DNA of 64,000 nt, from IMG/VR virus record IMGVR_UViG_3300024308_000302, positions 226,158 through 290,157 of that record. One strand, given 5' to 3'. The position numbers were made by a program, and so were the translations under genes. The notes beneath the pieces were generated by a model. That model made no database searches. It saw nothing but the letters and a program-made list of their open reading frames with translations, and was not told the DNA's origin. Position 1 is the stretch's first letter. Each line of letters starts with the position of its first letter. This document shows, in pieces, positions 19,359-64,000 of the stretch.

Positions 19359-20402
19359 TTAAAATCTTGCCATTTTTAAAATTTCAAAATCTTTAATATT
19401 GATTTCTTCTGCTGCAATATCCAAATTTTTCTTAAAAATCTCAGCAATATCATCCCTAAGAGCCTTATGAATATTATCAACACCATCAAAAGAGATTGTT
19501 TTAAAATTATGTGATGATCTAATATCAATTTTTCTATAAGAAATAAAATGATTTTCAGTAGTAACAACAAAAAATCTATGAAAATCCGATGGAGTATCTT
19601 CAATATTTATAGTATAACAATCATAATGGTCTTTAAATTTATTAGGATCAATCTCTAAAGTAATAAATCCTTTCAATGAATTAAATTCTTGTTTACTACC
19701 TGTCAAATTTATATAAAAAGCCAATGGATAAAATACTGAAACAATATCATCTAATTTAGACTTTGAAAAAAATGGACTTAAAGCTTTTCTTATTGATTTT
19801 GGATGCAAATCAAATTTAATCGAATTTGAACCATCATTTGTTTCAATATATTTACTTTTTAATTCATCTTCACTCATGTAAACAAAAGAATTATCAGGAA
19901 TTTTTGATGTAATAATATCTACATAATCCAAAGCCAATTTATCAATAAATTCTTTTAAAGTAATATTTTTTGGCATAATATCTTGTAATTTTCTTAAAAG
20001 TTCTGAATAGCACTTATCATAAGCAGAACCAGCCAACATTTCACTAAAGGTATATCTATTATTAAAGAGATCAATATAAATATTTTCAAGGGTCTGATTT
20101 TTTCTAATAGCAAATTTAAGATCCCCAAAGAAAAAAACTAATTTATCTATATAAAACCCAACACAAACTTTATCTGCTTTTTTTTGAAGATCCCCATAAA
20201 GAACAGATGAACGAAGATCTGACAAATTTTTTAATTGATCAAATTTTCGATAATCAATTTTAAACATTTCATCAAGAAATATAAAAGTATTTGCATCTGC
20301 TTCGAACATATAGACATCAGAATTTATACTGGAAGATTTCATTTTTGAGAAATCATAAAGTTCATGAAGACGTTCTTTTTTTTGAGTCATAAGATCTGTC
20401 AC
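19359..20402 (-). CDS. paralog family A protein with C-terminal signature
   Basis: GTG start after GGAGG; ends FEILKMARF*. Confidence 0.8.
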   Translation of the reverse strand: MTDLMTQKKERLHELYDFSKMKSSSINSDVYMFEADANTFIFLDEMFKIDYRKFDQLKNLSDLRSSVLYGDLQKKADKVCVGFYIDKLVFFFGDLKFAIRKNQTLENIYIDLFNNRYTFSEMLAGSAYDKCYSELLRKLQDIMPKNITLKEFIDKLALDYVDIITSKIPDNSFVYMSEDELKSKYIETNDGSNSIKFDLHPKSIRKALSPFFSKSKLDDIVSVFYPLAFYINLTGSKQEFNSLKGFITLEIDPNKFKDHYDCYTINIEDTPSDFHRFFVVTTENHFISYRKIDIRSSHNFKTISFDGVDNIHKALRDDIAEIFKKNLDIAAEEINIKDFEILKMARF

Positions 20403-20552
20403 AAGTGTACCTCCAAATATCCAAATATAAAATGAATTTAAACTTTGAGCTATGATTATATCAATATAGGGAAAAATTTGCAATATTTATTCAGAGAATA
20501 AAAAATACCACTCGAAAGTGGCATCTTATGTAAATTATGTAACTGAAGAACA

Positions 20553-21644
20553 TTAGAAACTAATCATAGTAATCAGTTCAATATCTTGATTACTAATATC
20601 TTGCTGTTCAATGTTTAATTTCTCCTTAAACACATTGGCAATATCCTTTTTAAGTTCATTGTATACAGCATCAATACCTTTAATTTTAGTTACCTCATAA
20701 CTTTGAGTAGCAATATTGATGCGATCTCTATGATTAGTATTATAAGAAATAAAATAATCATCAGTAGTAATACCAATAGATCGATATTTCATAATATTGG
20801 AGAAATGCATAGTTTCAGGCATATCAATACCCATAAAGTAACAATCATGATGTCTACTAAATTTATTTATACCATTCAAAGGTCCAATATAACCATGAAG
20901 TTCCTCAAACTTACCAGATGGATTATCAACAAGAGATAAAAACGCAAAATGAGAAAGCACAAATACTATATGATTTAATTTGTCTGTCGGGAAAAACGGT
21001 TTCAATGCTTGTCTAATTTCTGCTGGTTTCAACCCAAATTTTCTAATAGCAGTAGCCATATTAGAATCATCATAATCATCAGAAACATTAGAATATTTTT
21101 CAATAAATTCTTCATTATCAACATATACAAAAGCATTATCAGTAATAGAAGCATTAATAATGTCTTTGGGAGAAGATTTATTTTTAAAATTAAATTCGGC
21201 TAATGTGATATCAGATGGTAATAGGGAATTCAATTCTTCCAGTTTTTTTTGATAGTATTCTTCATAAGCTGAATTATCAATAAAAGAATTAAATGAAAAG
21301 AAAGTTTCATGTATACCAATTTTTGCATTTTCAATTTTTTGGCCACGATTAATATGAAACTTAATGTTACAGTTAAATTTTAATGTACCAGAATCAATAG
21401 CAACAATACAAGAAACTGATTTATCTATATCATGATTCCTAATATGCATTATAAGATTATTTAAATTTTTAATTTGATCAAGTTTCCTATAATCCAACGT
21501 AAAGAACTCATTTAAAAAAATAATAGATCGCTCATCATTCTCAAAAAAATAAAAAGTTGTACTACCAATACATTTAGTTTTTGCTGAATCAAAATCATAC
21601 AGTTCACGAAGACGTGTTTCCATGAGTTGCATTACATCAATCAT
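20553..21644 (-). CDS. paralog family A protein with C-terminal signature
   Basis: tandem paralog of 19359; ends IELITMISF*. Confidence 0.85.
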   Translation of the reverse strand: MIDVMQLMETRLRELYDFDSAKTKCIGSTTFYFFENDERSIIFLNEFFTLDYRKLDQIKNLNNLIMHIRNHDIDKSVSCIVAIDSGTLKFNCNIKFHINRGQKIENAKIGIHETFFSFNSFIDNSAYEEYYQKKLEELNSLLPSDITLAEFNFKNKSSPKDIINASITDNAFVYVDNEEFIEKYSNVSDDYDDSNMATAIRKFGLKPAEIRQALKPFFPTDKLNHIVFVLSHFAFLSLVDNPSGKFEELHGYIGPLNGINKFSRHHDCYFMGIDMPETMHFSNIMKYRSIGITTDDYFISYNTNHRDRINIATQSYEVTKIKGIDAVYNELKKDIANVFKEKLNIEQQDISNQDIELITMISF

Positions 21645-21712
21645 ATAAAATCCTCAAGTTGATTAATTAAAAATCAAAAATATAAAATATGTAGAAAAAC
21701 ATTGTATAATAT

Positions 21713-21734
21713 AAAAAAGAGGCCGAAGCCTCTT
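21713..21734 (-). terminator. rho-independent terminator (UUCG loop)
   Basis: aagaggccgaagcctctt + A-tract. Confidence 0.8.
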
Positions 21735-21747
21735 GAAAATTATTTAA

Positions 21748-22233: not shown

Positions 22234-22302
22234 TTTATAAATTCCTCTGTTTTAATGATGAATTAAGTATAACATAAAATGGAAATGAGAGCAATCAACT
22301 TA

Positions 22303-22527: not shown

Positions 22528-22560
22528 GTCAAAACTCCGTTTTTGATATATGCCATTTTA

Positions 22561-22986: not shown

Positions 22987-23101
22987 CCTATAATGTAATG
23001 TCCAATTATACCATAAAACAGACCGAATATCTACTATATTATCTAAAATTTGATATTTTTTAAAAAAGGTATATCATATATAAACAAAATTATTGGAGAA
23101 T

Positions 23102-23305: not shown

Positions 23306-23334
23306 AAGGCTGATTAAGTCAGCCTTTCATGATT

Positions 23335-24864: not shown

Positions 24865-24866
24865 CA

Positions 24867-25343: not shown

Positions 25344-26423
25344 TTAAATATCCATCATCTGTGCCAATAATACAATGTCTTCTGTCAAAACATCATATTC
25401 AATATTGTTTTCTTTCAAAATATTAAAAAGAAACGGAGAAGGATGTTTTAAAATAAGATGCATCATATTGTTTTTGAAGAAATCTAATTGAGCTAAAAAT
25501 ATCGAATCTGGAATTTTAGACAACATATCAACAAAGGTTATTTTAATACCATTTTTTAACACCTCAAATTGAAGATGAACAACATTAAAATTACTGTCAG
25601 GATTTAAAGAATTAATTTCAGTATCATATAGCCAAGAAATAAACTTGAAAGTATTCTTATAAGATTTTATAAATTTATTCCAAATAAGCTCAGAAAATAT
25701 AGATGACAAATTTCTATCATAGAAATAGGCATTAACAACCAATTTTTTATTAGAATAATTAAAATAACATGACGAATGGGGAATAGTTAATAAACTAATA
25801 CTTTTATAATCAACAAGTCTGTTTTCAATCATAAATTTAGTTAAACATGATCCTATATTGAGTCTATTTATATAATGACTAGCATAAGATTCAAGTGCAA
25901 TAGGTACACCAGCCAATGCATAAAATGAAAATTTATCACCATTATCAAAATGAATACTATATTTTTCAATAAAGCCAGCCACAATTTTTTTAGAAATGGT
26001 AACATCCATATAAACGATACCGTTTCTAAAAGCATCTTCTTGTGTTACCATCTCGAATTTGTGAATATCTTTAAATTTATACAGTTCAGAAAGAGATGCT
26101 AAATGAAAAAAACCAAAATTTGCAAGTAAAAAATCCATTTTTTCAGATACTGAGTCATAATTAGAAACATCAATAGACAAGGAAAACTGCATACTCGCCC
26201 AAGCAGCTTCTACTCTACGAGGATCAGTAAGAATAACTTCAATAAGTGCTGATGACTCTTCTAATTCAACAGTAAACTTATTCCCATATATGTTTTCTAC
26301 TATAAAAGTATTATCACAACGGTCATGAGAATATCGCAGTCCAGATGAAAATTCTTTTTTATGGATAAAAACAGATTTATTAATAAAGTCAGATAATTGT
26401 AGTCTTTTTTTGATCTTAATCAT
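25344..26423 (-). CDS. paralog family C protein with C-terminal signature
   Basis: ends VLLAQMMDI*; similar to 26436..27551. Confidence 0.8.
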   Translation of the reverse strand: MIKIKKRLQLSDFINKSVFIHKKEFSSGLRYSHDRCDNTFIVENIYGNKFTVELEESSALIEVILTDPRRVEAAWASMQFSLSIDVSNYDSVSEKMDFLLANFGFFHLASLSELYKFKDIHKFEMVTQEDAFRNGIVYMDVTISKKIVAGFIEKYSIHFDNGDKFSFYALAGVPIALESYASHYINRLNIGSCLTKFMIENRLVDYKSISLLTIPHSSCYFNYSNKKLVVNAYFYDRNLSSIFSELIWNKFIKSYKNTFKFISWLYDTEINSLNPDSNFNVVHLQFEVLKNGIKITFVDMLSKIPDSIFLAQLDFFKNNMMHLILKHPSPFLFNILKENNIEYDVLTEDIVLLAQMMDI

Positions 26424-26435: not shown

Positions 26436-27551
26436 TCAAACAGTATACATATCAAAAATAGAAACTGAATCTTCACCGAATGTTTCATTTCTATTTGCAA
26501 TAACACCATTATCAATAAAGAAATTAATCATAGTTTCTGATGGATACTTCAATGCCAATGCCATAAAATTAGAAGTTAATCTTTTTTCATCTGATTCAAA
26601 TAACAATTTCAAAAAGTCAACAGGTGATTCAGACCTTTTAATATTAATTTCAACAGAATCTTTATTAATGACACACTCAAGTTCAACAAAAGTTGGTTGA
26701 TAAGGCTGAGCTAAAAATCGACTTCTCTCTAAGCCAATATGATAAGAATAACTAACACCAAACAAAGAACATAGTTGATAAATCAACTTCGACCTATAGA
26801 CGATATGGTTAACCACGCCAGTAGGAAAAATATTTACAACATCGTCATAATTCATGACTGTTCTTAATGTAATAGAACCATTTTTCTTATACACTAAGAA
26901 ACTGGTATCAAACATAGAAATCTTTTTCACGTTTGCAATATTAATAAATTTTTTATAATGCTCAATAAATGAAGCTCTATTGTATAGAGTCTCAAAACGT
27001 CTACTTAAAGTGCTGTTAGCATATATATAATCAAAATCTAAGACTTCAAAACAAATGCCTGCCAAAGAATAATATTTTGTTGTAGGAATGCCAAGTCCTG
27101 AAATCTCCCACTTATCGAAAAGTGAAATACCCTTCAATTTTTTAAAATCCAAATGAAATTCAACATCATAATTGTCATGCAGAAAAACTTGGCCAGTTTG
27201 GAATATGTCTGAAAACTTAACAAATCCTATTTTTTTAAAAATTTTAAGCGAATGAAATGATGAAATATGAAAAAAGATAATGGATTCAGTCAAGAATTGA
27301 AGTGCATCTTCATCTTTTTCATAAGGATCTAAAGTAACAGAAAAATAATTTTTATGACCTAAACCCACTGCAACATAAGCTTTAGAGGTATTTTTATCCA
27401 GTTTCACAAAGATCTTATTACTATATGAATTAGTAAAATGGTATTCGCCATACTTGGCAACACACTTAATCTTATTCATAAATCTTTTGTCTGCTTTCTT
27501 AATGATAATTGGTCGCTCAAAAAGCTTATTATAAGATGGTTTATTAAACAT
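26436..27551 (-). CDS. paralog family C protein with C-terminal signature
   Basis: FFHISSF/FFHLASL, YSLAG/YALAG, LKYPS/LKHPS; ends VSIFDMYTV*. Confidence 0.8.
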   Translation of the reverse strand: MFNKPSYNKLFERPIIIKKADKRFMNKIKCVAKYGEYHFTNSYSNKIFVKLDKNTSKAYVAVGLGHKNYFSVTLDPYEKDEDALQFLTESIIFFHISSFHSLKIFKKIGFVKFSDIFQTGQVFLHDNYDVEFHLDFKKLKGISLFDKWEISGLGIPTTKYYSLAGICFEVLDFDYIYANSTLSRRFETLYNRASFIEHYKKFINIANVKKISMFDTSFLVYKKNGSITLRTVMNYDDVVNIFPTGVVNHIVYRSKLIYQLCSLFGVSYSYHIGLERSRFLAQPYQPTFVELECVINKDSVEINIKRSESPVDFLKLLFESDEKRLTSNFMALALKYPSETMINFFIDNGVIANRNETFGEDSVSIFDMYTV

Positions 27552-31107: not shown

Positions 31108-31186
31108 TGGATGCGAGAGTGGGATTCGAACCCACGATCTCCAGCTTATGAGGCTGGCGAGAACGGCCTGACTTCTCTATCTCGCT
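31108..31186 (-). tRNA. tRNA-Met(CAT), initiator-like
   Basis: cloverleaf; CCAGC-CTCATAA-GCTGG; A1:A72 mismatch, A11:U24; encoded CCA. Confidence 0.9.
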
Positions 31187-31199
31187 ACAAAGCGTAATT

Positions 31200-31276
31200 T
31201 GGTCGGAGTGGCAAGATTCGAACTTGCGGCATCTTGCTCCCAAAGCAAGCGGTCTACCGGGCTGACCTACACTCCG
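31200..31276 (-). tRNA. tRNA-Pro(TGG)
   Basis: CGGAGTG acceptor, CTTGC-TTTGGGA-GCAAG, TTCGAAT loop, CCA. Confidence 0.95.
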
Positions 31277-37087: not shown

Positions 37088-37171
37088 TGGTGCCCGGAGC
37101 CGGACTCGAACCGGCACGACTTTCGTCGGAAGATTTTAAGTCTTCTGTGTCTACCATTTCACCATCCGGGC
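37088..37171 (-). tRNA. tRNA-Leu(TAA)
   Basis: GCCCGGA acceptor, GAAGA-CTTAAAA-TCTTC, long variable arm, CCA. Confidence 0.95.
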
Positions 37172-38529: not shown

Positions 38530-40378
38530 ATGAACTACTCCGCCCTGAAGGACGAAGTTTCTTGGTTCGGAACCAAGTCTTCTCGCTGACGTTCATTGTC
38601 AACTTCAAATAAAGCTATCAGCTTCATTCGCACGGTTTCTCTTTTCATCTTTCTTGGCACGTATTGGCCATTTTTTAACTCATGAAAAGCTAATCGAAGA
38701 ACTTCTTCGAATATTCTGTTTCTTATATTCTTGCAAGCATTATTATCTGCATCATCTATATGACCACATGCATTACAAGTAAAACTTCTTCCTTTTCTAA
38801 CTGTATGCTCCACGCATTTACAGTTAGAACAAGTTTTAGAAGTATAGCTTGGTGTGGTCAGATGAACTCTGATGCCTTTGTTATTGGCTTGCTCTTTAAA
38901 CCAATCTTTGATACTTGAAAGTCTCAATAATCTAATTAACTTTGAATATTTTACATTCAAAGTTTCATCTTTAATAAAAGAAGCTTTACATTGAGACAAA
39001 TTCAAATCTTCAAGTACAATATCGGTAATGCCATTTTTAATTAAGTCTTTTAATATTGTCGATATTAAAGACTTGAAATGGAATTCAACACCTAATAATA
39101 GTTTATTGAATTTCTTTTGTTCTATTGTTGATAATTGTTTGAATCCTTTGTTCTCAAAGGATTTTAATTTTTCTACAATTGCTTCTATATAACTTCTATC
39201 ATAATCTTTAAGTTCTTCACGATCATGAAAAGCAATTGTACAAAAATTAGAAGCAACATTTAAATCAATACCACAAATTTGTTTTTTATTTATAACACTA
39301 TCTTTTTCTAATGGTTTAAAATATTCTTTATCATCTTCATAAGTCAAACCAATATCAAGATGATTTTTGCTATTCAAACGGACAGTATGAATAGCATTAA
39401 GGTTAAAATTGTTTATATTTTGGTGATATTTAGAATTGAAGGCTAAAGGAACATGAATGTGTTCCTTACCAATTCTAAAATTATACCAATATTTATACTC
39501 ATTTGATTCATCAATATAAATATGAGAATGTTTAGTTTGACCAATTTGTGGTATTTTCATGTAAGAGCCAGTTGAATATACAATTGGCTCTTTCATATAT
39601 GACAATATTCTTTGTTTTCTATTTATAAGTAATTGTCTAACTCTATTCCAATAAGGTTTTTTCCTTAATGCTTCAATGCTGTTATTGAAATCAATAACAG
39701 ATTGAAGTTTGAGAGGATCTTTAACTTCTAAAGACTTTAATGAAGAATCAAGGCTTGATTCTTCAATAAACATCAACCAGTTCATTATTTTAGTTAAAGA
39801 AGAATTTCTTGAAATAAAGGTGGTGTCTTTGACATCTCCTTTTTTATGTAAAATTTGACCATCTTTTGAAGTTACATTACGTTTATAGTAAGTAATTTTA
39901 AATTCTTTTTGGAGAATAAACTTATTGTTCGAAATAAGTTTATCCATCCAATTAGAATAGAAGTCCATAGATTGATGAAATATTTTTTGAATTTCCCAAG
40001 AATAGAGATTAGGGGTTTTAAATTGCTTAAAACGAGAAGCCAGAACTTTTTTAGAATCTTCATTACAAAGCATTGCTTTGTGATTGAAGATATAGTATGA
40101 AATATTGTTTTTAAAGTTTTTAACAAAATCAAAATGTTGGATCAGGGTATTTTTCTTCTTATGATTGAGAATCGACGAAGAAGAAATACGTTTAGTTTTG
40201 ATATTTTTTTTATCAGAAGATCCAAAAGCCATAAGATTCCTTAAAATATATGCTTGCAAATTATAGACCAAGAGAAATAAAAAAGCAAGCAAAAAATGTA
40301 AGAAATCAAAAAAGAAGTAAATTTTTATCCCCGACCTGAAGGAAGAGGTTTTAAATTTTATAATTTGATTTCAATAGG
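38530..40378 (-). mobile_element. tnpB-only IS200/IS605-family element (IS1341-like)
   Basis: subterminal hairpins aaaacctcttccttcaggtcgggga (LE) and gaaacttcgtccttcagggcggag (RE); inserted 3' of TTAT, ends TCAT; no TSD; no tnpA. Confidence 0.85.
38535..40232 (-). CDS. tnpB: TnpB RNA-guided endonuclease (565 aa)
   Basis: RuvC GIDLN / LEDL / DADNNA; YTSKTCSNC..CNACG zinc finger. Confidence 0.9.
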   Translation of the reverse strand: MAFGSSDKKNIKTKRISSSSILNHKKKNTLIQHFDFVKNFKNNISYYIFNHKAMLCNEDSKKVLASRFKQFKTPNLYSWEIQKIFHQSMDFYSNWMDKLISNNKFILQKEFKITYYKRNVTSKDGQILHKKGDVKDTTFISRNSSLTKIMNWLMFIEESSLDSSLKSLEVKDPLKLQSVIDFNNSIEALRKKPYWNRVRQLLINRKQRILSYMKEPIVYSTGSYMKIPQIGQTKHSHIYIDESNEYKYWYNFRIGKEHIHVPLAFNSKYHQNINNFNLNAIHTVRLNSKNHLDIGLTYEDDKEYFKPLEKDSVINKKQICGIDLNVASNFCTIAFHDREELKDYDRSYIEAIVEKLKSFENKGFKQLSTIEQKKFNKLLLGVEFHFKSLISTILKDLIKNGITDIVLEDLNLSQCKASFIKDETLNVKYSKLIRLLRLSSIKDWFKEQANNKGIRVHLTTPSYTSKTCSNCKCVEHTVRKGRSFTCNACGHIDDADNNACKNIRNRIFEEVLRLAFHELKNGQYVPRKMKRETVRMKLIALFEVDNERQREDLVPNQETSSFRAE

Positions 40379-44983: not shown

Positions 44984-45184
44984 ATGTGTTTATCCTCAAA
45001 ATTTTCAATAAATGGCAGATTACAAAGGTAATCAAAATAGACAGAAGCGTTATTGCTTTGTTTCTTATGGTGTCTATTGTAACGAACGGTAGCACCTGTA
45101 GCAAGTTTTTTTTGAGGAATTTGATGAATTTTTTGTTATGAGGTGTTTGGTAACAAAAAGAAAAAGGCCCATGAGGGCCTGCTT

Positions 45185-46243
45185 TTAAATAGACATCATC
45201 TTATACAACAACAATGAATGATCAGTGAGTTCACTTGAAGGAATATTTAGTCTTTTAGTAAATCTACTTTTCACTTTTTCAAAAAGATGATTATAAATAT
45301 TTTCATAACCACTCAAAGAAACCAGATCTTGAGTATGATGATTAACTTCCATATAACCAATATCTGGATTTGTAAGCGAAAAATACAAACCAATAGTGCA
45401 TGGAACATCATCGTAGTATACAACCATTATAGAATATAAGTTATCTTCTACTTTGAAATGTTTAGTTGGTCGAATCAAGTTAAAGAATAGTTCATATCTT
45501 TGCATATTATACAATAAACACGAATCAAATCTTAATAGTCCCTCAATAATCTTAACTTGACTTACGAGTTGCTTGCTAAAAACCAATGGAAGTGAATCAA
45601 AAAGTCTTTTTGGTTCAACTCCAAAATTAAAGAAATACATTGCGAAATCATCTGGAGTAATATGCATCAAATCTTTATTTACAAGTCTTTCCTTTTGGAT
45701 ATCAATTACCGTTTTTTTTGACAAAGAGAGTAACTTTTTAAAAGTCATATCATTTTCAAGAAATTCACGAGTTTTAACTAAAATACCAGAATACAGATTT
45801 TCAAAAGAAACATAATCTATCAAACAGTCAGACTTAAAAAAAGAATTTTGATAGAGGATAAATTCAACAACATGATCATCTGATTCTCTTGAAAATGAAA
45901 AACTCAGTGTATCGCCCAAATAGAACTTAACAGTAGCTCTTGGAACGTGGCTATATTGGCTAATTGGAATGGCAATTTGTAATGATTTATTTGCATCCTT
46001 TTTTTCTTTTTCCAAATCGCTGACATAGTAATAGAAATCAATAAGTGTTGAAAGTTGTTTAATTTTTTTAAGATTATAATTGCAACTATGAAATTCAAAA
46101 AATGAAGCAATAAATTTATAATCTCGATCACTACGAGGAAGTGTATAAATTGTAAAATTATTTTTTACAGTGATATCTGCAACATCATCCAAGTTGTAAA
46201 AAGATTGCAATCTATCTAAGCAATCATCATAAAAAGTAGGCAT
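45185..46243 (-). CDS. paralog family A protein with C-terminal signature
   Basis: begins MPTFYDD; ends LLLYKMMSI*. Confidence 0.85.
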   Translation of the reverse strand: MPTFYDDCLDRLQSFYNLDDVADITVKNNFTIYTLPRSDRDYKFIASFFEFHSCNYNLKKIKQLSTLIDFYYYVSDLEKEKKDANKSLQIAIPISQYSHVPRATVKFYLGDTLSFSFSRESDDHVVEFILYQNSFFKSDCLIDYVSFENLYSGILVKTREFLENDMTFKKLLSLSKKTVIDIQKERLVNKDLMHITPDDFAMYFFNFGVEPKRLFDSLPLVFSKQLVSQVKIIEGLLRFDSCLLYNMQRYELFFNLIRPTKHFKVEDNLYSIMVVYYDDVPCTIGLYFSLTNPDIGYMEVNHHTQDLVSLSGYENIYNHLFEKVKSRFTKRLNIPSSELTDHSLLLYKMMSI

Positions 46244-46351
46244 TATTAATATCCTTCAAAATATTTTTAAGCATATGTGATAATAACATACACCTAAAAA
46301 AAAGTATACAAAAAAACAGCCAAAGCTGTTTTATTATCTTACAAAGAGTAA

Positions 46352-47676: not shown

Positions 47677-48456
47677 TCAAATTAAAGACATTTTCATTAC
47701 ATTCAAGTTTTCATCAAATCCATCATCGAATATACCATTGTCATAAAGCTCTTTCATCTTGAAATAGAAATGAGAGAGTTTGTCATTAGTGTCAAGTTGA
47801 GTGTATTCAAAATAAGGATAAAATTCTAAAAAAATTGGAAATGCTGAATGAATAGTTGCTAAATTTTTACTAAGAAAATTATTAAATAAACAAAACTCAT
47901 CATCTGGTGTTTCATAAGAAGTCCTAATTGAATAATCGTTTGTACTCAAGTCAATATCCCCACGGATTGAATTATGTTTGCTATCCATGTAATAATAGAA
48001 AGTAAATTCATCATCATTATCTGTATAAAAATTTCTTTCTAACAAATAATCTTTGATTTCATTTTTAGAATCAAGATTAATGTCTACACGAATTAAATGT
48101 GCTAAATCAGGAAATTTTAACGAATTATCATATAAACCATATTCAGCAGTGAAAGTTATATATTCAAAATTACCATATGAGTCATAATTAAACTGGATAT
48201 TACCAGCACTTTTACCAATGCCATAAGTAGAAGTTGCCCTGAAATTATGGCCTATAAGACAACTAGTCAAACTAATGTTTTCAAAGTTAATTTCTGGATT
48301 AAACTTTTCGTTAAATTGATTAAAAAGGTGAATAATTCTATGTTTAAAATAGAATTGATGCTCTGACTTCATGAGCACCAATTTAACCTTTTGATCGTTT
48401 AAACAAGAAAAGTCAGGATTTAAAAAATCGAATATAACGGACTCATCAACTTTCAT
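47677..48456 (-). CDS. hypothetical protein with C-terminal signature
   Basis: ends LNVMKMSLI*. Confidence 0.8.
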   Translation of the reverse strand: MKVDESVIFDFLNPDFSCLNDQKVKLVLMKSEHQFYFKHRIIHLFNQFNEKFNPEINFENISLTSCLIGHNFRATSTYGIGKSAGNIQFNYDSYGNFEYITFTAEYGLYDNSLKFPDLAHLIRVDINLDSKNEIKDYLLERNFYTDNDDEFTFYYYMDSKHNSIRGDIDLSTNDYSIRTSYETPDDEFCLFNNFLSKNLATIHSAFPIFLEFYPYFEYTQLDTNDKLSHFYFKMKELYDNGIFDDGFDENLNVMKMSLI

Positions 48457-54602: not shown

Positions 54603-55322
54603 TTAGATAGACATCATTTCTACCAAAAGTAATGAGGATTTTGTTTTCCTAACCAAATCATATTTTTCTTTAAGATATAGGTCATAAAAACATTTTTCAA
54701 AAGAAAAATGAGGATCTTTATTAATTGAAACATTCTTTTTTAAATGATCAGGTATATCATTAGAATCATTTTTATTAATCGGCATTAAATATTGCACATT
54801 GAACTTGTTGTTAGAAGTATTAAGATTCACCCAAATCAAGCGTCTGTTTAGCTCAAGATCCCACTTATATTTAATAACATTGTCTCTTAATCTTATAGTA
54901 ATAGAAAGTCCATCATAAAATAAAGCTTCAATGTTATTATTATACTCTTCACAACCTACATAATTTGTTGAGATCTCTTTTTCAAGTTTAAACTTTTTGA
55001 TATTTTCAAGAAAGGCATTTTTTATACTGCCATCATTATGAATGAAATGAGATGAAACGTCTGGTGTGATGTCAAAAATCTCCAACTCATTATCAAGACA
55101 ATATCGTACAATAAAGTCAAAGTTATATTGAGTAGTTATAGAAAATTCGAGAGCAGTAGGACCATTAGATGACGATGTACCATACTTAGGATTAACCCTA
55201 ATATCTAAAATGATTAAATCAGAATTAAAAACTAAAGATAATTTTGATTTAATCCAATACTTTTTATCATCATCACTGACAGTCCAAGATGCTTGGTTAA
55301 GTTTTTTTTGTATCTTATCCAT
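54603..55322 (-). CDS. hypothetical protein with C-terminal signature
   Basis: ends LLLVEMMSI*. Confidence 0.8.
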   Translation of the reverse strand: MDKIQKKLNQASWTVSDDDKKYWIKSKLSLVFNSDLIILDIRVNPKYGTSSSNGPTALEFSITTQYNFDFIVRYCLDNELEIFDITPDVSSHFIHNDGSIKNAFLENIKKFKLEKEISTNYVGCEEYNNNIEALFYDGLSITIRLRDNVIKYKWDLELNRRLIWVNLNTSNNKFNVQYLMPINKNDSNDIPDHLKKNVSINKDPHFSFEKCFYDLYLKEKYDLVRKTKSSLLLVEMMSI

Positions 55323-55935: not shown

Positions 55936-56898
55936 TTAAAGCATAAGCATATCTATAAGCAACAAACGATTATTAAATTCAGAAGAATTAAAATCATAAG
56001 CAGAAGGAATACAGAACTCAGGAAAAGTTAATTTCAATTCTTCATCAGAGTCTAATACAAGGTGTAATTTTATTAATTGTCCAATATCAGTCAAGCAAAG
56101 ATCTTTAACAGGTAATTTAACTGATTTAGAAAAATTACTGTTACAGAAGAATGTACAAATATTATCAGTAATGGCACCACAGGTATCATACATATTAGTT
56201 ACTATTACAAAAATCTCCTTTTTACGAGAATCTGAAGTCTCATAATATAGAGATGGTGAAGTGGATTGAAATTTTACTTTTGTAAGATGCAAAGAATGAT
56301 CAAAAGCAAATGAAACTGTACTACTAATTTGCCCAAATGAAATATTTTCATTAATCATATTAATTTTTACTTGAATTGATTCCACATTTTTAGTTAAAAA
56401 ATTAGAAACATCATCATCAATATAAGGATAATACGATTTATTATCAATAACCTTATCTACACTATTTACGTCATAAGTGTAATCTTTTAAAAATTTATGA
56501 ATTTGTTTTTTCATCAAATAATGAGTTTCTTCACCTGAAATTTCATAACTATCCTTCGATTTATATACATTCAAATTAGGAGTTATAACAATATTCAATA
56601 ACTCATCACCAACATCATCTGAAAGTGAATAACTTAAATGTACATGACTGAATGAAAGATCATCATTAAAAATAGCCCAAAGGACAGTATGAGCATTGCT
56701 GAAGAAATTAAGTACAGGTTGAAAATCAACAGGTAGAGGAATATCAGGATTAATAATTTTCAATGAATGCTTATCCAGATAAACTGATTCTCGTTCATTA
56801 ATAAAGCAAGCAGCACTGGACAGGACTTTAAGAACAGCAATATCAGATGCTTTCAAATGTAATAAAATACGTTCAATTATTTCAAATGTTGCTTCCAT
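55936..56898 (-). CDS. hypothetical protein with C-terminal signature, related to 16755..17402
   Basis: LTFPEF..AYDFNSSEFNNRLLLIDMLML*. Confidence 0.8.
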   Translation of the reverse strand: MEATFEIIERILLHLKASDIAVLKVLSSAACFINERESVYLDKHSLKIINPDIPLPVDFQPVLNFFSNAHTVLWAIFNDDLSFSHVHLSYSLSDDVGDELLNIVITPNLNVYKSKDSYEISGEETHYLMKKQIHKFLKDYTYDVNSVDKVIDNKSYYPYIDDDVSNFLTKNVESIQVKINMINENISFGQISSTVSFAFDHSLHLTKVKFQSTSPSLYYETSDSRKKEIFVIVTNMYDTCGAITDNICTFFCNSNFSKSVKLPVKDLCLTDIGQLIKLHLVLDSDEELKLTFPEFCIPSAYDFNSSEFNNRLLLIDMLML

Positions 56899-58681: not shown

Positions 58682-59719
58682 TTAATAATTTATCATATGA
58701 CACAACAAAACTTGATTAGTAGTTATATCTTCCATATTGATGTTTTCAAGATTTAATGTGTTAACTATTGTATCAAAAATCTTTGTTCTAAAAGTGTCAT
58801 AAACTACAGAGATATTATCAATAGACACAAAAACACCTTTATTATTACAGCTATAATTAAAGCCTGATTCTGATAAGTTAATTGATATAGTTTCATATTT
58901 ATTGTTTGAAAATTTAATAGTATATAGTGTAGAATCAACTAAAAATCTACTTACTTTTTCATTACGTTTTACGAAATAAGAAAAACAAGAATCACCGGAT
59001 ATATAATGATAGAATTGAATGACAGAAATTAGTTGAAGTATTTCATGAGCTTTATGATAACCAAGAACAGACAATAAGAATGACTTAAATTTACTGAAGG
59101 ATAGTTCAACAGTAGAATCATGAGCTATGAATGATATTGAATTTGAAGAAATATTTTGAACAAAATCATTCTTCCTGAAAATTTCAAAATAATCCTCAAA
59201 AATTGTATTGTAACAAACAAGCACATCTGAAAATTTAATTTCTTTAATCTTAGGATTTTTTAAATAATTTTTGATAACTTCCATATAAGTTTTATGAAGT
59301 AATGAATCATCCATAATTTGTTCTCTATTAAAATTTCTAAGTTCAATTGTAAATATGATTTCACCATTTTCTGGAATATATATTTTAGAATTCAAACTAC
59401 CAAGATAAATATAGAAATCATTATTAATACGTTGAATCATATATAAGTTCGAATAACTAGAACTACCATTTAAAAGTTTATGAAGGATTCGTATCGAGCT
59501 TAATTGAAGAAAATATCTATAATTGAAAGGAAATATCTCATTAATCCCTTTTAAGAAGGACACAATATCTGAATGACAATCCTTAATGAAATAAAGTTCT
59601 GAAGTAGGTTTTAATTTAACAATTCGCTGTTCATTATTATTTAACTGGCGATTAAAGTAATCAGAACCAAATAAAGATTCAACCATAAGAATGATTTGCT
59701 GATGATAATTTGTATTCAT
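58682..59719 (-). CDS. paralog family A protein with C-terminal signature
   Basis: ends VLLCHMINY*. Confidence 0.8.
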   Translation of the reverse strand: MNTNYHQQIILMVESLFGSDYFNRQLNNNEQRIVKLKPTSELYFIKDCHSDIVSFLKGINEIFPFNYRYFLQLSSIRILHKLLNGSSSYSNLYMIQRINNDFYIYLGSLNSKIYIPENGEIIFTIELRNFNREQIMDDSLLHKTYMEVIKNYLKNPKIKEIKFSDVLVCYNTIFEDYFEIFRKNDFVQNISSNSISFIAHDSTVELSFSKFKSFLLSVLGYHKAHEILQLISVIQFYHYISGDSCFSYFVKRNEKVSRFLVDSTLYTIKFSNNKYETISINLSESGFNYSCNNKGVFVSIDNISVVYDTFRTKIFDTIVNTLNLENINMEDITTNQVLLCHMINY

Positions 59720-59860: not shown

Positions 59861-60160
59861 ATGAATGATAAAACAAAAAGAATATTAAAACATATGTTAA
59901 GTGCAATCATATTGATGATCTCATTATTATTTGGATTCGCATCCATAACATGTTTTGTAATAGGTGCTCCAGTAATGGGTGTATTTTATATTATGTTCTC
60001 AATATCAATTATTACACTACTATTTAAGAAATCTAAAATGAATAGAATAATTTTAGCAATATTTTTATTAGCCACATTAATTTTAGGTACATTCCTTAAT
60101 CAAATTGCACCACAAGAACCAGAAATAGTAGACCAATACTTAGAAAGCCATCAGATCTGA
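59861..60160 (+). CDS. three-TM membrane protein
   Basis: GAGGA RBS; hydrophobic helices. Confidence 0.75.
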   Translation: MNDKTKRILKHMLSAIILMISLLFGFASITCFVIGAPVMGVFYIMFSISIITLLFKKSKMNRIILAIFLLATLILGTFLNQIAPQEPEIVDQYLESHQI

Positions 60161-60168
60161 TGGCTTTT

Positions 60169-61206
60169 TTATTTATATTTCACGATGAAATAAACATTTA
60201 AATCTTGGAATGTTAAATAAAGAGGATCTATATCCAATGTTTTTGATATATCTTTAATTAATACTGTTTTAAGAAAATTATAAATTTCACAATAACCATG
60301 CAGATGAACACTTTTACCTTCATTATCGATATATGCCAATTTAAATAAAGATTCATCAGTATTAATAGCCAATCTATATGAGTTAATTTTGCTTTCAAAA
60401 GTTATTACATTGTACGAATTAAGTAATTTTGATTTATATCGATTAAAAATATAATCTATATTATTAAAAAATGGTCTTATAGATTTATTAAAAACAAAAC
60501 AATCAAGTATTTCTAAAAAATGAATTAAGGTTTTTAATTGGTTAATACCTTTTGAATTAACTTTAGATTTCTTTAAAATGTCAAGTATAGCATCAAAACC
60601 ATGATCTTTAATTAAAACAATTTCATATTCATGTGAAAGATATTTTGAAGCATTCTTATAAAGGTCTGTAATAGAGATATCAGCAAAAAGATTTTTCTTG
60701 AAAGAGTTTTGAATTACTGACTCTATATCAAGATTACAAAATTGAAGAACATTTTTATCATTAATAGTTAACAGGCGGGGATAATGAGAAATTTTTGAAT
60801 TCAAAAAATCCATATAAATGGTGTCATATTTTTCTTCAAACTCATCAACACAATATCTACATCCGTTAATAATAACAAAAATGTCATTCATGCCAATAAA
60901 TATTTCAAAACATGGTTTTATATTAATAGTGAGTTTATCTTCCCATATATCCAAGTAAATATATGGTTCAAAATGTTTTGATTCCATAAAGCTCAATATA
61001 TTCATGAGTGAAATAAATTGATTAATTTTATTAACATTAAGATTGGGAATTAAATTTAATAAATCATTAAATTTCTTATAGTCATATTTATAAATAATGG
61101 AAATCGTAGACAGAATGAGTCCATCAGATAGGCTATAACTAAAAGCACCATCTTTAGGATAGGACTTAATAATAAAATCATTAATAATAGAAAAGATAGA
61201 TTTCAC
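60169..61206 (-). CDS. paralog family A protein, variant C-terminus
   Basis: GYCEIYNFLK..LDI..DLNVYFIVKYK*. Confidence 0.75.
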   Translation of the reverse strand: MKSIFSIINDFIIKSYPKDGAFSYSLSDGLILSTISIIYKYDYKKFNDLLNLIPNLNVNKINQFISLMNILSFMESKHFEPYIYLDIWEDKLTINIKPCFEIFIGMNDIFVIINGCRYCVDEFEEKYDTIYMDFLNSKISHYPRLLTINDKNVLQFCNLDIESVIQNSFKKNLFADISITDLYKNASKYLSHEYEIVLIKDHGFDAILDILKKSKVNSKGINQLKTLIHFLEILDCFVFNKSIRPFFNNIDYIFNRYKSKLLNSYNVITFESKINSYRLAINTDESLFKLAYIDNEGKSVHLHGYCEIYNFLKTVLIKDISKTLDIDPLYLTFQDLNVYFIVKYK

Positions 61207-61679
61207 TTCAACTCCCCATTTAGAGAGTAAAGAATATAATCATGAATTAGCTTTTCTTTGTTACCCATTAAAAGACGTACACCTAAAAAATTAACATCAC
61301 TATAATCATGACCTAACCAATAACGTTTTTTATTAACATGTTGATTTAATCCTGCATGAGCAGAAAAAAACAAAGAAGCTTTTTCAACAATATCTAAAAT
61401 AACTTCGTCAGGAGGTCTTTTCTGTGTTCTAATACCAATAGAATGAGCGTGAAGATTGTTTTTACATAGATGATGATCAAACAAAGAAAGCGTGTTATAG
61501 CTGTAATATTCTAAATAATCGTACCACCATTTATCATAGGTAGTGTTCCTGAAAGGACATTCGATATAAAAGGAAGATAAAGAAGACTCAATTTCAAAAC
61601 CAGTAATAAATGAAAATAAATAATCCATGAATTCTGTACAGTTTCTATCTGTATCAATTGTTATAATGTATTTAGCCAT
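61203..61679 (-). CDS. hypothetical protein, paralog of 62409..62876
   Basis: ITIDTD..FSFITG / LIIDTN..CAFVTG. Confidence 0.75.
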   Translation of the reverse strand: MAKYIITIDTDRNCTEFMDYLFSFITGFEIESSLSSFYIECPFRNTTYDKWWYDYLEYYSYNTLSLFDHHLCKNNLHAHSIGIRTQKRPPDEVILDIVEKASLFFSAHAGLNQHVNKKRYWLGHDYSDVNFLGVRLLMGNKEKLIHDYILYSLNGELK

Positions 61680-61696
61680 GATATCAAGACCTTTAA

Positions 61697-62356
61697 TTAG
61701 GTGAACAGATGTTCACCAATTGCAAACTTTTGACTTGCACTATCAACATTATTCAAAGAAGGAAGATATTCAATGATGTAATCAGGAACTGATTCCTCGG
61801 AGAAAAATAGCGTGTAGTCAAAAAGCATAATGAAAGCAGACAAATTGTAAACAACAGAAGAAAGCGTACTAACATCTGTGAGCAATTCAGCACCTGAATT
61901 ATAGATGATAGCATGTGCATCTTTGTCAGCTACACCTTTTGAATCAAATGCAAAAATGTAGTTTTCATGTGCTTTTGGCTTATGAAGACAAACTGACAAC
62001 GACTTACAGTTTTGATGGTAAGCTTCTCGAATATCATAAATATTAGAATCAAAAGTGATTCGAACAGGAACATCAACATAATCCACACCAGCAATTCCAA
62101 TAAGTTTACCTACACGAACAGTAAAATATTTGGAATAGCTATCTTCAATCTCTTTCTGAATGTCCAAAAATGTCATTGCTTTGTTCACACAGTCATCAAG
62201 ACCTGACCCAACAATGACTTTATAATCATTCTTATTAAAAAAACGCAATTGACAAGAATCTGGAGAATTACTTGCAACTTTAGCTGAATCATGTTCAATA
62301 GTCGGAGCATAAATACTAAGCCAGTGATTTCTTTCTTCTTGTGTATATTTTTTCAT
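61697..62356 (-). CDS. hypothetical protein
   Basis: 219 aa. Confidence 0.75.
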   Translation of the reverse strand: MKKYTQEERNHWLSIYAPTIEHDSAKVASNSPDSCQLRFFNKNDYKVIVGSGLDDCVNKAMTFLDIQKEIEDSYSKYFTVRVGKLIGIAGVDYVDVPVRITFDSNIYDIREAYHQNCKSLSVCLHKPKAHENYIFAFDSKGVADKDAHAIIYNSGAELLTDVSTLSSVVYNLSAFIMLFDYTLFFSEESVPDYIIEYLPSLNNVDSASQKFAIGEHLFT

Positions 62357-62408
62357 TTTTGAAGATCTCTTAAATTGAAGTATGGATTATATCAAAAACC
62401 AATACAAA

Positions 62409-62876
62409 TTAGCAATCAAAAACATCAAAACGATGAACCAAAGACTGATCTTCTTCTTTAATAATACGCAAACTCAAAAGTTTGAAGTTATCAATATTCA
62501 AATCACTACGACCAATGCTTGACATAACTGTATGGTAGTTATCAACAAAATATTTAGAACGGTCAATAATTTCAGAAATAACCAAATCATCAGGGACTTC
62601 TTCAATATAAATCTGTACTGAATTATATTTATTGCCATGTTGAGCTTCGGATGGATAAATATCGACTGGACTATAGCATTCAGACCCCGGATTTTCTGGA
62701 TCTTCAATATGAATGATGTTTTCTTTAAACCAATCAAGATTTTGAATATCAGCAGAATATTTTTTTGAAATCTCTGCTCCAACACCAGAATCACCCCACT
62801 CACCCGTTACAAATGCACAAAAATTACGTTCAAAATTGCCAGCATAACTGTTAGTATCAATAATCAGGTAGTACAT
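62409..62876 (-). CDS. hypothetical protein, paralog of 61203..61679
   Basis: 155 aa, GAGGA RBS. Confidence 0.8.
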   Translation of the reverse strand: MYYLIIDTNSYAGNFERNFCAFVTGEWGDSGVGAEISKKYSADIQNLDWFKENIIHIEDPENPGSECYSPVDIYPSEAQHGNKYNSVQIYIEEVPDDLVISEIIDRSKYFVDNYHTVMSSIGRSDLNIDNFKLLSLRIIKEEDQSLVHRFDVFDC

Positions 62877-62935
62877 AATAAGTCCTCTTTAAAAGTTAAT
62901 TATATAGCAAAAAAAGTAAAAATAAAAGAAATATT

Positions 62936-64000
62936 TTAAATTTTAAGCATTTGATATAGTTCAATAGATTTATTACAAAGGTCTTGATTTTCTATTCCAG
63001 TAACAGCAGAAATCTTATCCAACAAGGATTTTTTCAAGTGCTCATAAATATTATCAATACCACGAATACAAAGTGGTTCATAATCAAATTCTTCTGTCCT
63101 ACATTCATAAACCAAACAATCAGAATGGGTAGTAATATATAGGTCTTGCCATCCATTAATTTTTTGATTATGTGTGAAAGTTATATTGTATAAATAATGT
63201 TCATCTCGAAATTTATTTATTACATCTTGAAATCTGATTTCAATTTTAAATTTTTTTGAATAAAAATCTAAATCATCCAATTGTTCTTTAAAAACAAGAA
63301 TACTAAAAATTTCATTTAGTTTATTCAAATGATCATTACTTAAAAATGGGCTAAGGTATTTTTGAACTTTATAATTTGTGATATCAAATTCATGAGACTT
63401 AGATCCATTAATTAAATCCAAGTTAACAATAGAATCCGATTCGTTTTTTTTATGAAATAAATTATTAAATTCTGTAGCTGTATAATATGAAATCTTGTTA
63501 TCAACAATTATAGAATTAATAAACTCTTTTAAATCTAAGTTCATAGTATGAATGAAAGACTTAGCTGTGATATTGGCAGGCAATAAAGCATTAAGTGTAG
63601 TTAATCTTTCTTGATACGTTTTTTCATAAGCTGTTCCATCTATAAGTTCATTAAGAGAAAACTCATCAAAATGAAATCTAATTTTCAGATTACTTAAACT
63701 TGTTTTATTAAATACTGCAAACATAAGCCTTGGTCCATGACTAAACATAACATTCTTATTAGTGTAAATAATTTTAACTTTAAATGATTGTTTAGTCTCG
63801 CCCTTCTGAATATAATCAAGAAGCCACATAATAGATTCTAATTGTGCAATTTTATGACTGTCAAGATTGAAAAATAGAGAAACAATTTCTTCAAATCTAT
63901 GATCATATTCAAAATGATAAACACGCGGCAATACTTCTGAATCATCATGTTCATATTTTTTTTGAATTGCATCTACAAATTCATCATAAAAAGATGGCAT
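62936..64000 (-). CDS. paralog family A protein with C-terminal signature
   Basis: begins MPSFYDE (cf. MPTFYDD at 46243); ends IELYQMLKI*. Confidence 0.85.
   Translation of the reverse strand: MPSFYDEFVDAIQKKYEHDDSEVLPRVYHFEYDHRFEEIVSLFFNLDSHKIAQLESIMWLLDYIQKGETKQSFKVKIIYTNKNVMFSHGPRLMFAVFNKTSLSNLKIRFHFDEFSLNELIDGTAYEKTYQERLTTLNALLPANITAKSFIHTMNLDLKEFINSIIVDNKISYYTATEFNNLFHKKNESDSIVNLDLINGSKSHEFDITNYKVQKYLSPFLSNDHLNKLNEIFSILVFKEQLDDLDFYSKKFKIEIRFQDVINKFRDEHYLYNITFTHNQKINGWQDLYITTHSDCLVYECRTEEFDYEPLCIRGIDNIYEHLKKSLLDKISAVTGIENQDLCNKSIELYQMLKI

What the first reader, a model, noticed from the sequence alone, without database searches (positions are those of the whole stretch)
19359..64000. Six-member, highly diverged ~350 aa paralog family (family A)
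Seen: 19359, 20553, 45185, 58682, 60169 and 62936 share an N-terminal block (FKIDYRKFDQLKNL / FTLDYRKLDQIKNL / YNLKKIKQLSTL / FPFNYRYFLQLSSI / PNLNVNKINQFISL / FNLDSHKIAQLESI) and a C-terminal block (G-x-D/E-x-I/V-Y/H-x-x-L..L-N/D-I) before the M-x-x-h tail. 60169 has lost the Met and gained a terminal Lys, so it is a natural variant of the signal. Inference: expansion with diversification, as in host-interaction or anti-defence families.
Basis: partly seen in the sequence, partly recalled or inferred. Interest (0 to 1): 0.6.

Follow-up and report, generated by a model that had tools for sequence, protein, structure and literature searches.

The report
Orphan two-module paralog family with shared tail
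The six genes are real relatives: they belong to an old family of about 345-residue proteins (at least 13 copies) with no detectable known fold, and each ends in a short tail that about 9% of this AT-rich element's proteins share, so the tail looks like a common docking or sorting tag whose partner is unknown.

Summary
BLASTP links only four of the six proteins. A profile built only from relatives found elsewhere recovers all six full length (weakest E 4.5e-19). It also recovers five more copies upstream of the window, and two more lie just past the record's end.

Each protein is a tandem duplication of one alpha/beta module of about 150 residues (hhalign E 8.6e-6). AlphaFold2 models the module at pLDDT 94.7, yet its best PDB match is only Z 4.0. 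There are no Pfam, PHROG or PDB sequence matches. Only 58 cluster representatives match among 1.84 billion proteins.

The paralogs are old: each has closer kin in related elements than in its own genome. They diverge faster than their neighbours (38-46% against 54-93% identity in a syntenic relative). Close-strain dN/dS is below 1 (0.30 and 0.69).

The M-x-x-hydrophobic tail is part of a 12-residue C-terminal motif on 40 of 488 ORFs, on otherwise unrelated bodies, and it is kept in relatives. It resembles the clamp-binding C-terminus of RB69 DNA polymerase.

My reading is a variable, non-enzymatic binding body plus a constant docking tail. Function and partner are inferred, not shown. The host record is an excerpt of a 1.54-Mb contig in which I found no capsid or terminase.

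The parts
19359..20390 (-). Family member, 343 aa from the corrected ATG start. The listed ORF ran on to a TTG at 20483. Tail ...FEILKMARF.
   Evidence: E 2.5e-69; 343-aa gene call in the near-identical strain L024; promoter-like site at 20483-20455 inside the over-long ORF
20553..21644 (-). Family member, 363 aa, used as the modelling reference. It forms a tandem pair with 19359. Tail ...IELITMISF.
   Evidence: (E 4e-74)
45185..46243 (-). Family member, 352 aa. Tail ...LLLYKMMSI.
   Evidence: E 7.6e-60
58682..59719 (-). Highly diverged family member, 345 aa from the corrected start. Tail ...VLLCHMINY.
   Evidence: E 4e-6 at iteration 1; 345-aa gene call; E 4.5e-19, profile positions 17-343
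60169..61206 (-). Highly diverged family member, 345 aa, GTG start. Variant tail ...LNVYFIVKYK: Ile replaces Met and one Lys is added.
   Evidence: E 1e-7 at iteration 2; E 8.9e-24
62936..64000 (-). Family member, 354 aa. Its ATG is the last base triplet of the record. A further member follows at once on the parent contig (L016:8917-9987).
   Evidence: (E 3.7e-70)
20556..20591 (-). Example of the 12-codon C-terminal tail ([KDEN]-D-x-[LIV]-x-[LIV]-h-x-M-x-x-[IFVLY], then stop). The same position in the other members is 19362-19397, 45188-45223, 58685-58720, 60172-60207 (variant) and 62939-62974.
19331..19346 (-). Intrinsic-terminator-like hairpin plus T run just downstream of the 19359 gene.
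   Evidence: 4 sites found, 0.5 expected
20502..20527 (-). Terminator-like hairpin between the two tandem members.
20455..20483 (-). Best sigma-70-like site (TTGCAA-17-TG-TATAAT, 10 of 12), about 65 nt upstream of the corrected 19359 start.
   Evidence: Promoter-like sites as a class do not exceed shuffles, so this is weak evidence.
45165..45180 (-). Terminator-like hairpin just downstream of the 45185 gene. Another lies upstream of its start at 46313-46332.
   Evidence: 7 sites found, 0.6 expected
60142..60169 (.). Palindromic hairpin at the 3' end of the 60169 gene.

Best explanation
Family A is a lineage-restricted family of non-enzymatic proteins, each about 345 residues long.

Shown:
- Each protein is a tandem duplication of one alpha/beta module of about 150 residues: two short strands, a long helix carrying the conserved Q-x-x-S/x-L motif, a five-stranded sheet, and a long helix carrying Y-x-x-x-L.
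- The fold has no detectable counterpart among solved structures.
- The protein ends in a short acidic, hydrophobic amphipathic helix right at the C-terminus.
- That tail is also carried by about 30 other proteins of the element whose bodies are unrelated.
- The copies are old paralogs kept in related elements.
- The bodies diverge quickly while the tail is held fixed.
- Four of the six window genes are bracketed by intrinsic terminators.

Inferred: the variable body is a binding surface that engages a different target in each paralog, whether a host or a competitor molecule. The constant tail is a docking or sorting peptide that brings all tail-bearing proteins to one shared partner. The logic matches viral multigene families that combine a variable recognition domain with a constant C-terminal hub-binding motif. 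The partner is unknown. The nearest sequence precedent I could verify is the C-terminal clamp-binding peptide of RB69 DNA polymerase.
For: - Family reality and extent.
- Narrow distribution, with the tail kept in nearly all 58 representatives.
- Internal duplication: hhalign N half against C half gives E 6e-5 with 11 sequences and E 8.6e-6 (probability 83%, 102 columns) with 45 sequences.
- Models: pLDDT 81.9 and pTM 0.71 for the full length, 94.7 and 0.84 for the N module.
- No fold match: best VIA Z 4.8 (whole protein) and 4.0 (module); Foldseek E of 0.0076 or worse in PDB and 0.0093 or worse in BFVD; Atlas TM 0.29 or lower normalised by the query.
- Conserved columns are almost all hydrophobic or aromatic, plus one Gln, one Glu, one Lys and one Ser. 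There is no His, Asp or Cys pattern of a catalytic kind.
- The tail: 40 ORFs observed against 5 expected from composition. It is strictly terminal, with 2-8 internal matches in 75,863 positions. Scored leave-one-out and ignoring positions -4 and -1, 31 of 40 tails still exceed the 95th percentile of other C-termini.
- The tail is conserved at codon positions 1 and 2, hardly at position 3.
- Tail-bearing bodies are unrelated to family A by hhalign, and 20 of them have no Pfam match.
- The tail is kept in orthologs of the syntenic relative and on other proteins in more distant relatives.
- Family members diverge faster than nearly all their neighbours. dN/dS is 0.30 and 0.69, with no change in the tails.
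- The paralogs are old.
- Terminators flank the members.
- The RB69 gp43 C-terminus ...KKASLFDMFDF, read from the record, scores 9.0 on the tail matrix. Only 1 of 448 non-tail C-termini reaches that score.
Against: - No function, target or partner was observed. The binding role is argued from the lack of catalytic-type conservation and from analogy.
- Promoter-like sites do not exceed shuffles in this AT-rich DNA, so expression timing is unknown.
- dN/dS below 1 gives no direct sign of an arms race.
- The record has no Pfam match to a gp45-type or beta clamp, a terminase or an HK97 capsid. No candidate partner was found, and the nature of the element (phage, giant element or bacterial island) is unsettled.
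- The RB69 comparison is a single case chosen after the fact.
- The tail helix has the lowest confidence in the model apart from three loops (blocks at pLDDT 71 and 60), so whether it is free or packs on the body is not known.
Confidence: 0.4

Rival explanations
1. The tail-bearing proteins, family A included, are virion cargo. The C-terminal peptide would load them into a capsid, or onto an internal body, for ejection into the host. This would parallel the C-terminal cargo-loading peptides that load diverse cargo into HK97-fold encapsulin shells (from my own knowledge).
For: A short, strictly terminal motif sits on about 9% of proteins with unrelated bodies. The accessory gene content is phage-like: T4-type RNA ligase, NUDIX, HNH nucleases, an endolysin. 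One PHROG 'virion structural protein' match lies elsewhere in the record.
Against: The 290-kb record has no Pfam match to a capsid or terminase. The known phage capsid-targeting signals (T4) are N-terminal and are cleaved off. Nothing shows that these proteins are in particles.
Confidence: 0.15
2. The tail is a C-terminal degron or protease-tethering peptide. It would time the removal of these proteins, or let them hand bound targets to a protease, as the C-terminal ClpX-binding peptide of SspB does (from my own knowledge).
For: The tail is a terminal hydrophobic peptide with an exposed carboxylate, and M-h-x-h-COOH fits the general h-x-h-COOH pattern read by PDZ-type and protease N-domains. 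The record encodes two trypsin-like proteases.
Against: Those proteases are only 199 and 226 aa, with no room for a PDZ domain. A degron would not need a conserved 12-residue amphipathic helix. No data bear on protein stability.
Confidence: 0.12
3. The tail is a sliding-clamp-binding peptide of the T4/RB69 type (or binds another replisome hub), so these proteins ride on a clamp.
For: The RB69 gp43 C-terminus matches the motif at positions -7, -6, -5, -4 and -1 and scores 9.0. Only 1 of 448 other C-termini reaches that score.
Against: Forty-odd clamp clients would be without precedent. No gp45-like or beta clamp was found in the record. The match is to one short peptide chosen after the fact.
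Confidence: 0.08
4. The 1.54-Mb contig is the genome of a small-genome bacterium. The tail-bearing proteins would then be secreted effectors, and the tail a C-terminal secretion signal.
For: The record is cut from a 1,539,155-bp contig and has no capsid or terminase match. C-terminal signals are known for type IV secretion (from my own knowledge).
Against: The roughly 170 largest ORFs scanned show no housekeeping genes and no eukaryote-like effector domains; the matches are phage-type accessory genes, a few metabolic or transport genes (M17 aminopeptidase, Na+/H+ exchanger, amino-acid kinase) and two TnpB-type transposase genes. No secretion system was seen. There are 35 tRNA genes with many duplicates for AT-rich codons. 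Known secretion signals are far less sharply defined.
Confidence: 0.1
5. The six ORFs are not truly related. The shared blocks would reflect AT-rich composition plus the genome-wide tail.
For: BLASTP finds nothing for 58682 and 60169.
Against: An external profile matches both nearly full length at E 4.5e-19 and 9e-24, with a clean gap to noise. Length, strand and secondary-structure order are the same. A tail-free profile still separates the family from the other tail-bearing proteins.
Confidence: 0.02

Closest known systems
Viral multigene families with a variable recognition domain and a constant C-terminal hub-binding motif, such as poxvirus ankyrin-repeat proteins with a C-terminal PRANC/F-box-like domain (from my own knowledge)
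   Same: Many diverged paralogs sit in the accessory part of a large genome. The body varies, the extreme C-terminus stays constant, and copies are kept over long times.
   Different: There is no sequence or fold relation. The constant part here is only about 12-20 residues. It is shared with non-homologous proteins, and its partner is unknown. The genes have bacterial-type ribosome-binding sites and terminators.
C-terminal clamp-binding peptide of RB69/T4 DNA polymerase gp43 (...SLFDMFDF-COOH; binding to gp45 is established knowledge, Shamoo and Steitz 1999, recalled from memory)
   Same: The pattern at the very C-terminus is the same: aliphatic at -7, hydrophobic at -6, acidic at -5, Met at -4, hydrophobic at -1. 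I verified the sequence in the RB69 record and scored it.
   Different: That peptide occurs on a few replication and transcription proteins, not on 9% of a proteome. No clamp gene was found in this record. Binding was not tested.
Encapsulin cargo-loading peptides and microcompartment encapsulation peptides (from my own knowledge)
   Same: They are short terminal peptides, portable between unrelated cargo proteins, and read by one shell protein.
   Different: The consensus sequences differ. No shell or capsid gene was identified here, so this is an analogy only.
Paralogous orphan families in the accessory regions of huge phages and T4-like early regions
   Same: The genes are small and one-stranded, many have their own terminators, about 20% of ORFs fall into paralog clusters, they diverge quickly, and they lack annotation.
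   Different: This family has no match in PHROGs, in the phage record collection or in IMG/VR contigs. The record lacks phage hallmark genes.
T4 MotA C-terminal 'double wing' domain and BamC helix-grip domains, the best weak structural neighbours
   Same: They are alpha/beta modules of similar size, and BamC also has two in tandem.
   Different: The scores are at noise level: MotA Z 4.1, BamC Foldseek E 0.1-1.2 with TM at most 0.17. I do not treat these as relatives.

Membership tests
Family A (as defined here) | A near full-length match to a profile built only from external homologs | tested here: met
   All six window ORFs and five more in the record match at E 4e-74 to 4.5e-19. The next ORF scores E 0.004.
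Family A (as defined here) | Two tandem copies of the alpha/beta module, each with a Q-x-x-S/x-L helix and a Y-x-x-x-L helix | tested here: met
   hhalign N half against C half gives E 8.6e-6 over 102 columns. The order of secondary-structure elements repeats in the model.
Family A (as defined here) | A C-terminal L-Y-x-M-x-x-hydrophobic tail | tested here: met
   Five of the six window members have it. 60169 carries the variant I-V-K-Y-K. Met is in 84% of 45 aligned sequences.
Any Pfam, PHROG or PDB sequence family | A significant profile match | tested here: not met
   No match passes a curated cut-off. The best E-values are 0.007 or weaker (Pfam), 0.05 or weaker (PHROGs) and 0.29 or weaker (PDB).
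Known protein folds (PDB, BFVD, ESM Atlas) | Structural similarity above noise for the whole protein or for one module | tested here: not met
   Best Z is 4.8 (whole) and 4.0 (module at pLDDT 94.7). Foldseek E is 0.0076 or worse. Atlas TM normalised by the query is 0.29 or lower. A weak search result does not prove that the fold is new.
T4/RB69-type clamp-binding C-terminal peptide | Sequence pattern at the extreme C-terminus | tested here: met
   The RB69 gp43 tail scores 9.0 on the tail matrix, which 1 of 448 non-tail C-termini reaches. This is a resemblance only.
T4/RB69-type clamp-binding C-terminal peptide | A cognate sliding clamp encoded by the element, and binding to it | tested here: not met
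   PF02916 and PF00712 have no match in the 290-kb record. The rest of the 1.54-Mb contig could not be searched. Binding cannot be tested with these tools.
Tailed phage (for the host record) | A large terminase subunit and an HK97-type major capsid protein | tested here: not met
   PF03237, PF17289 and PF05065 have no match in the record. The ten largest ORFs scanned singly gave one partial PHROG match to a 'virion structural protein' and no Pfam structural family. The listed PHROG families of 150 further ORFs include none annotated as structural. Other capsid and terminase families, and the rest of the contig, were not tested.

The most novel reading that the evidence does not exclude
The family is one client class of a previously undescribed sorting or docking system. 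In this system a 12-residue C-terminal peptide ([KDEN]-D-x-[LIV]-x-[LIV]-h-x-M-x-x-[IFVLY]-COOH) addresses about 9% of the proteome of a very large AT-rich element to one receptor. The element may be far larger than any described phage, since the record is cut from a 1.54-Mb contig and the orphan genes continue past both of its ends. The family body would then be a new duplicated alpha/beta fold used as a diversifiable binding scaffold.
Probability: 0.3. Interest if true: 0.85.

Novelty: new variant of a known kind. Interest (0 to 1): 0.6.

Why it matters
Diverged paralog families are common in large mobile genomes, and most cannot be interpreted. This one offers three handles for experiment.
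- It has a confidently modelled duplicated module with no detectable structural relative.
- The family is deep and old but phylogenetically narrow, so orthologs and paralogs can be compared.
- It carries a sharply defined, strictly terminal peptide shared with dozens of unrelated proteins and conserved across related elements.

A single pull-down or localisation experiment with that peptide could assign a common pathway to about 40 orphan proteins at once. It would also show whether large prokaryotic elements use a linear C-terminal address tag, comparable to PTS1, encapsulin cargo peptides or clamp-binding tails.

Tried and rejected
- Database searches for the family that found nothing: Pfam, PHROGs and PDB sequence searches. 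Also tblastn against 50,697 phage records, pattern scans of IMG/VR contigs and of GTDB genomes, and the language-model look-alike search.
- Fold searches in four libraries with two models found nothing above noise. I do not accept the weak MotA-CTD, Med17 and BamC rows as relatives.
- Alternative genetic code, rejected. Recoding any stop does not merge ORFs meaningfully. TAA, TGA and TAG follow the tails in the same proportions as elsewhere.
- The tail as a DNA-level motif, rejected. Conservation sits at codon positions 1 and 2.
- One hidden superfamily for all tail-bearing proteins, not supported. hhalign of 30 tail-stripped bodies against the family profile gave only one weak hit (the 255-aa ORF at genome 150775-151542, E 4e-4 over 49 columns).
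- A PDZ-bearing protease as tail receptor, rejected. The two trypsin-like proteins are too short.
- Naming the organism failed. An HMG-CoA reductase pattern scan found nothing. The parent contig is not held for whole-record search. The sample ids appear in no paper. Two literature searches for a described tail motif or a megabase phage found nothing relevant.
- The 'Acinetobacter phage MD-2021a' hits are a mislabelled bacterial assembly. They give only a faint hint of kinship with gammaproteobacteria, through tRNA-Leu and pepA.
- Complex prediction and read laying were not used. I had no defensible partner to test, and no question that needed reads.


Full report
**Context.** The window is bases 226158-290157 of a 290,157-bp IMG/VR record classed as a 'provirus'. 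The record has 32% G+C. About 80% of its ORFs are on the minus strand, and none is longer than 633 aa.

The record is an excerpt of a 1,539,155-bp metagenomic contig, cut at gene boundaries. Past its right end lie, in order:
- another family member;
- a roughly 9-kb metabolic cluster (HMG-CoA reductase, UbiA, a PEP-utilising enzyme, an AMP-binding enzyme) at 34% G+C;
- more orphan genes, including a further family member.

Orphan genes also continue past the left end.

I scanned the 160 largest ORFs outside the family and tail set. Recognisable functions are mostly phage-type accessory genes: T4-type RNA ligase, RLIG1, NUDIX, three DEDDh exonucleases, HNH, WHH and colicin-type nucleases, and an endolysin. 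There are also two TnpB-type transposase genes, an M17 aminopeptidase and a Na+/H+ exchanger.

No terminase, HK97 capsid, gp45-type clamp or beta clamp profile matches the record. Whether this is part of a very large phage-like element or an island in a small bacterial genome stays open. The standard code applies.

**The observation.** BLASTP alone joins 19359, 20553 and 62936 firmly and 45185 marginally. It leaves 58682 and 60169 unlinked.

An iterated profile search over all 1134 ORFs of the record converges on 11 proteins of about 345 aa, all on the minus strand. These are the six in the window plus genome 194905-195894, 195895-196896, 199683-200774, 207877-208932 and 219680-220711.

A profile of these 11 found only 58 cluster representatives (E at most 0.001) among 1.84 billion proteins. 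Most are full-length proteins of 320-420 aa. I then built a profile from 34 of those external proteins alone. It hits exactly the same 11 local ORFs nearly end to end (E 4e-74 to 4.5e-19), with a clean gap to E 0.004. That settles the homology of the two outliers.

Two more members lie on the parent contig just outside the record.

**Anatomy.** AlphaFold2 with the 11-sequence alignment gives pLDDT 81.9 and pTM 0.71. The order of secondary-structure elements repeats.

Profile-profile alignment of the N half against the C half gives E 6e-5. With 45 sequences it gives E 8.6e-6 (probability 83%, 102 columns). So the protein is an internal duplication:
Its twin lies at residues 229-239.
Its twin lies at residues 128-135.

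The N module folded alone with 45 sequences reaches pLDDT 94.7. Even so, its best match among 48,161 PDB representatives is Z 4.0, well under the Z 7-8 that the tool says is usual even for unmatched models. Foldseek, BFVD and the ESM Atlas give nothing.

Conserved columns are hydrophobic or aromatic, plus one Gln, one Glu, one Lys and one Ser. There is no catalytic-type pattern. I therefore read the body as a binding or scaffold protein, not an enzyme. This is inference.

**The tail.** The M-x-x-hydrophobic end belongs to a 12-residue terminal motif: [KDEN]-D-x-[LIV]-x-[LIV]-h-x-M-x-x-[IFVLY]-COOH.
- It occurs on 40 of 488 ORFs, against 5 expected from composition.
- It is almost never internal: 2-8 matches in 75,863 positions.
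- Scored leave-one-out and without the two defining positions, 31 of 40 tails still exceed the 95th percentile of other C-termini.
- Conservation sits at codon positions 1 and 2 (0.44 against 0.28), and hardly at position 3 (0.37 against 0.32). Selection is therefore on the peptide.

The bodies of the other tail-bearing proteins show no similarity to family A. Twenty of them have no Pfam match. The tail is retained in orthologs at 32-54% identity in a syntenic relative, and it occurs on further proteins in more distant relatives.

Within the family, Met-to-Ile at position -4 recurs in several lineages. The 60169 protein carries that change plus a unique extra Lys.

The C-terminus of RB69 DNA polymerase, read from the phage record as ...KKASLFDMFDF, fits the motif. 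It scores 9.0, which only 1 of 448 non-tail C-termini reaches. That this peptide binds the gp45 clamp is established knowledge I recalled from memory. Here it is a lead, not a test.

**Evolution.** In a syntenic 21-kb stretch of a related contig, most neighbours are 54-93% identical. The two family orthologs are 38% and 46% identical. Another relative has three copies at that locus instead of two.

On a quick maximum-likelihood tree of 48 sequences the local copies are fully scattered. Most pair with a protein from another element. The exceptions are the long-branch members 58682, 60169, 194905 and 195895. So the paralogs predate the split of these elements.

Against a near-identical strain, dN/dS is 0.30 and 0.69 for the two tandem members. 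It is 0.24 and 0.08 for two neighbours. None of the 15 amino-acid changes falls in the last 14 residues. The counts are small. They show constraint, perhaps relaxed, not positive selection.

**Gene organisation.** Terminator-like hairpins are enriched (4 against 0.5 expected, and 7 against 0.6). They bracket the 19359, 20553 and 45185 genes, and a palindromic hairpin follows the 60169 gene. Clear ribosome-binding sites precede the starts. Promoter-like sites are not enriched over shuffles, so I make no claim about expression timing.

**Interpretation.** The best-supported model is modular. A fast-diverging, duplicated binding body is joined to a fixed C-terminal peptide that connects all tail-bearing proteins to one partner. 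What that partner is could not be decided. The candidates are a clamp-like hub, a shell, a protease or unfoldase, and a secretion coupling protein. I give each a low individual probability.

**Limits.**
- I could not search the rest of the 1.54-Mb contig.
- I could not name the organism.
- I found no candidate partner, so I ran no complex prediction.
- The external profile was drawn from hits of a profile that contained the local sequences. This is a mild circularity. The strength and full length of the matches offset it.

Noticed in passing
whole record; in the window for example 99-860, 2744-3514, 3536-4393, 16755-17402, 25344-26423, 26436-27551, 47677-48456, 54603-55322, 55936-56898 (all minus strand): A 12-residue, strictly C-terminal motif ends 40 of 488 ORFs whose bodies are otherwise unrelated. 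It is also present on other proteins in related contigs (L001, L017, L019). It resembles the clamp-binding C-terminus of RB69 gp43.
   Followed up: partly
window 64000 and beyond (L016, L017); record start (L023): The 'provirus' record is cut at gene boundaries out of a 1,539,155-bp contig. Orphan genes and family members continue past both ends. An island of HMG-CoA reductase, UbiA, a PEP-utilising enzyme and an AMP-binding enzyme (34% G+C) sits at the right-hand cut. No terminase, capsid or clamp profile matches the 290 kb.
   Followed up: partly
genome 33-183 kb (L003-L012); window 31108-31276 and 37088-37171: There are 35 tRNA genes with heavy redundancy: about 12 Leu(UAA), 7 with anticodon CAU, 5 Arg(UCU). 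Two have a CUA (amber-reading) anticodon, at about genome 179.8 and 180.8 kb. Two have odd anticodon loops. Even so, TAG still ends ORFs.
   Followed up: partly
window 4436-5932 and 5929-7815; genome 209584-211026 and 211023-212924: A two-gene module (about 490 aa plus about 630 aa, overlapping by 4 nt) is present twice. These are the largest ORFs of the record, and they match nothing in Pfam, PHROGs or phage records.
   Followed up: partly
window 38535-40292 (minus strand): A 585-aa TnpB/Cas12f-like protein (TNB domain, E 2e-15). A second OrfB_IS605-type transposase lies elsewhere in the record.
   Followed up: no
whole record: BLASTP clusters 99 of 488 ORFs into 40 paralog groups. One is a nine-member family without tails (window copy at 939-1466). 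Another is a three-member family in which all copies carry the tail (window 3536-4393; genome 189176-190018 and 223448-224281).
   Followed up: no
window 18297-19247, 15959-16612: A DEDDh exonuclease (one of three paralogs) and an RLIG1-type RNA ligase lie next to the tandem family pair. The ligase is 93% identical in the relative where the family members are only 38-46% identical.
   Followed up: partly
window 19359-21644 compared with L001 and L025: Copy number and content of this locus vary between relatives. There are two adjacent copies here, two copies split by two inserted genes in L001, and three copies in L025.
   Followed up: partly
window 19359-21644 (sequencing-run search): Near-identical DNA occurs in runs from 14 studies labelled subsurface, soil, food, freshwater, plant, silage and wastewater, and in several single-organism runs. 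The carrier is therefore cosmopolitan, or it is a frequent contaminant.
   Followed up: no
phage collection records CAKLQF02/CAKLQH02 ('Acinetobacter phage MD-2021a'): These 'phage' records carry ordinary bacterial chromosome genes (pepA, holC, ribD, amtB and others), so they appear to be a mislabelled bacterial assembly.
   Followed up: partly
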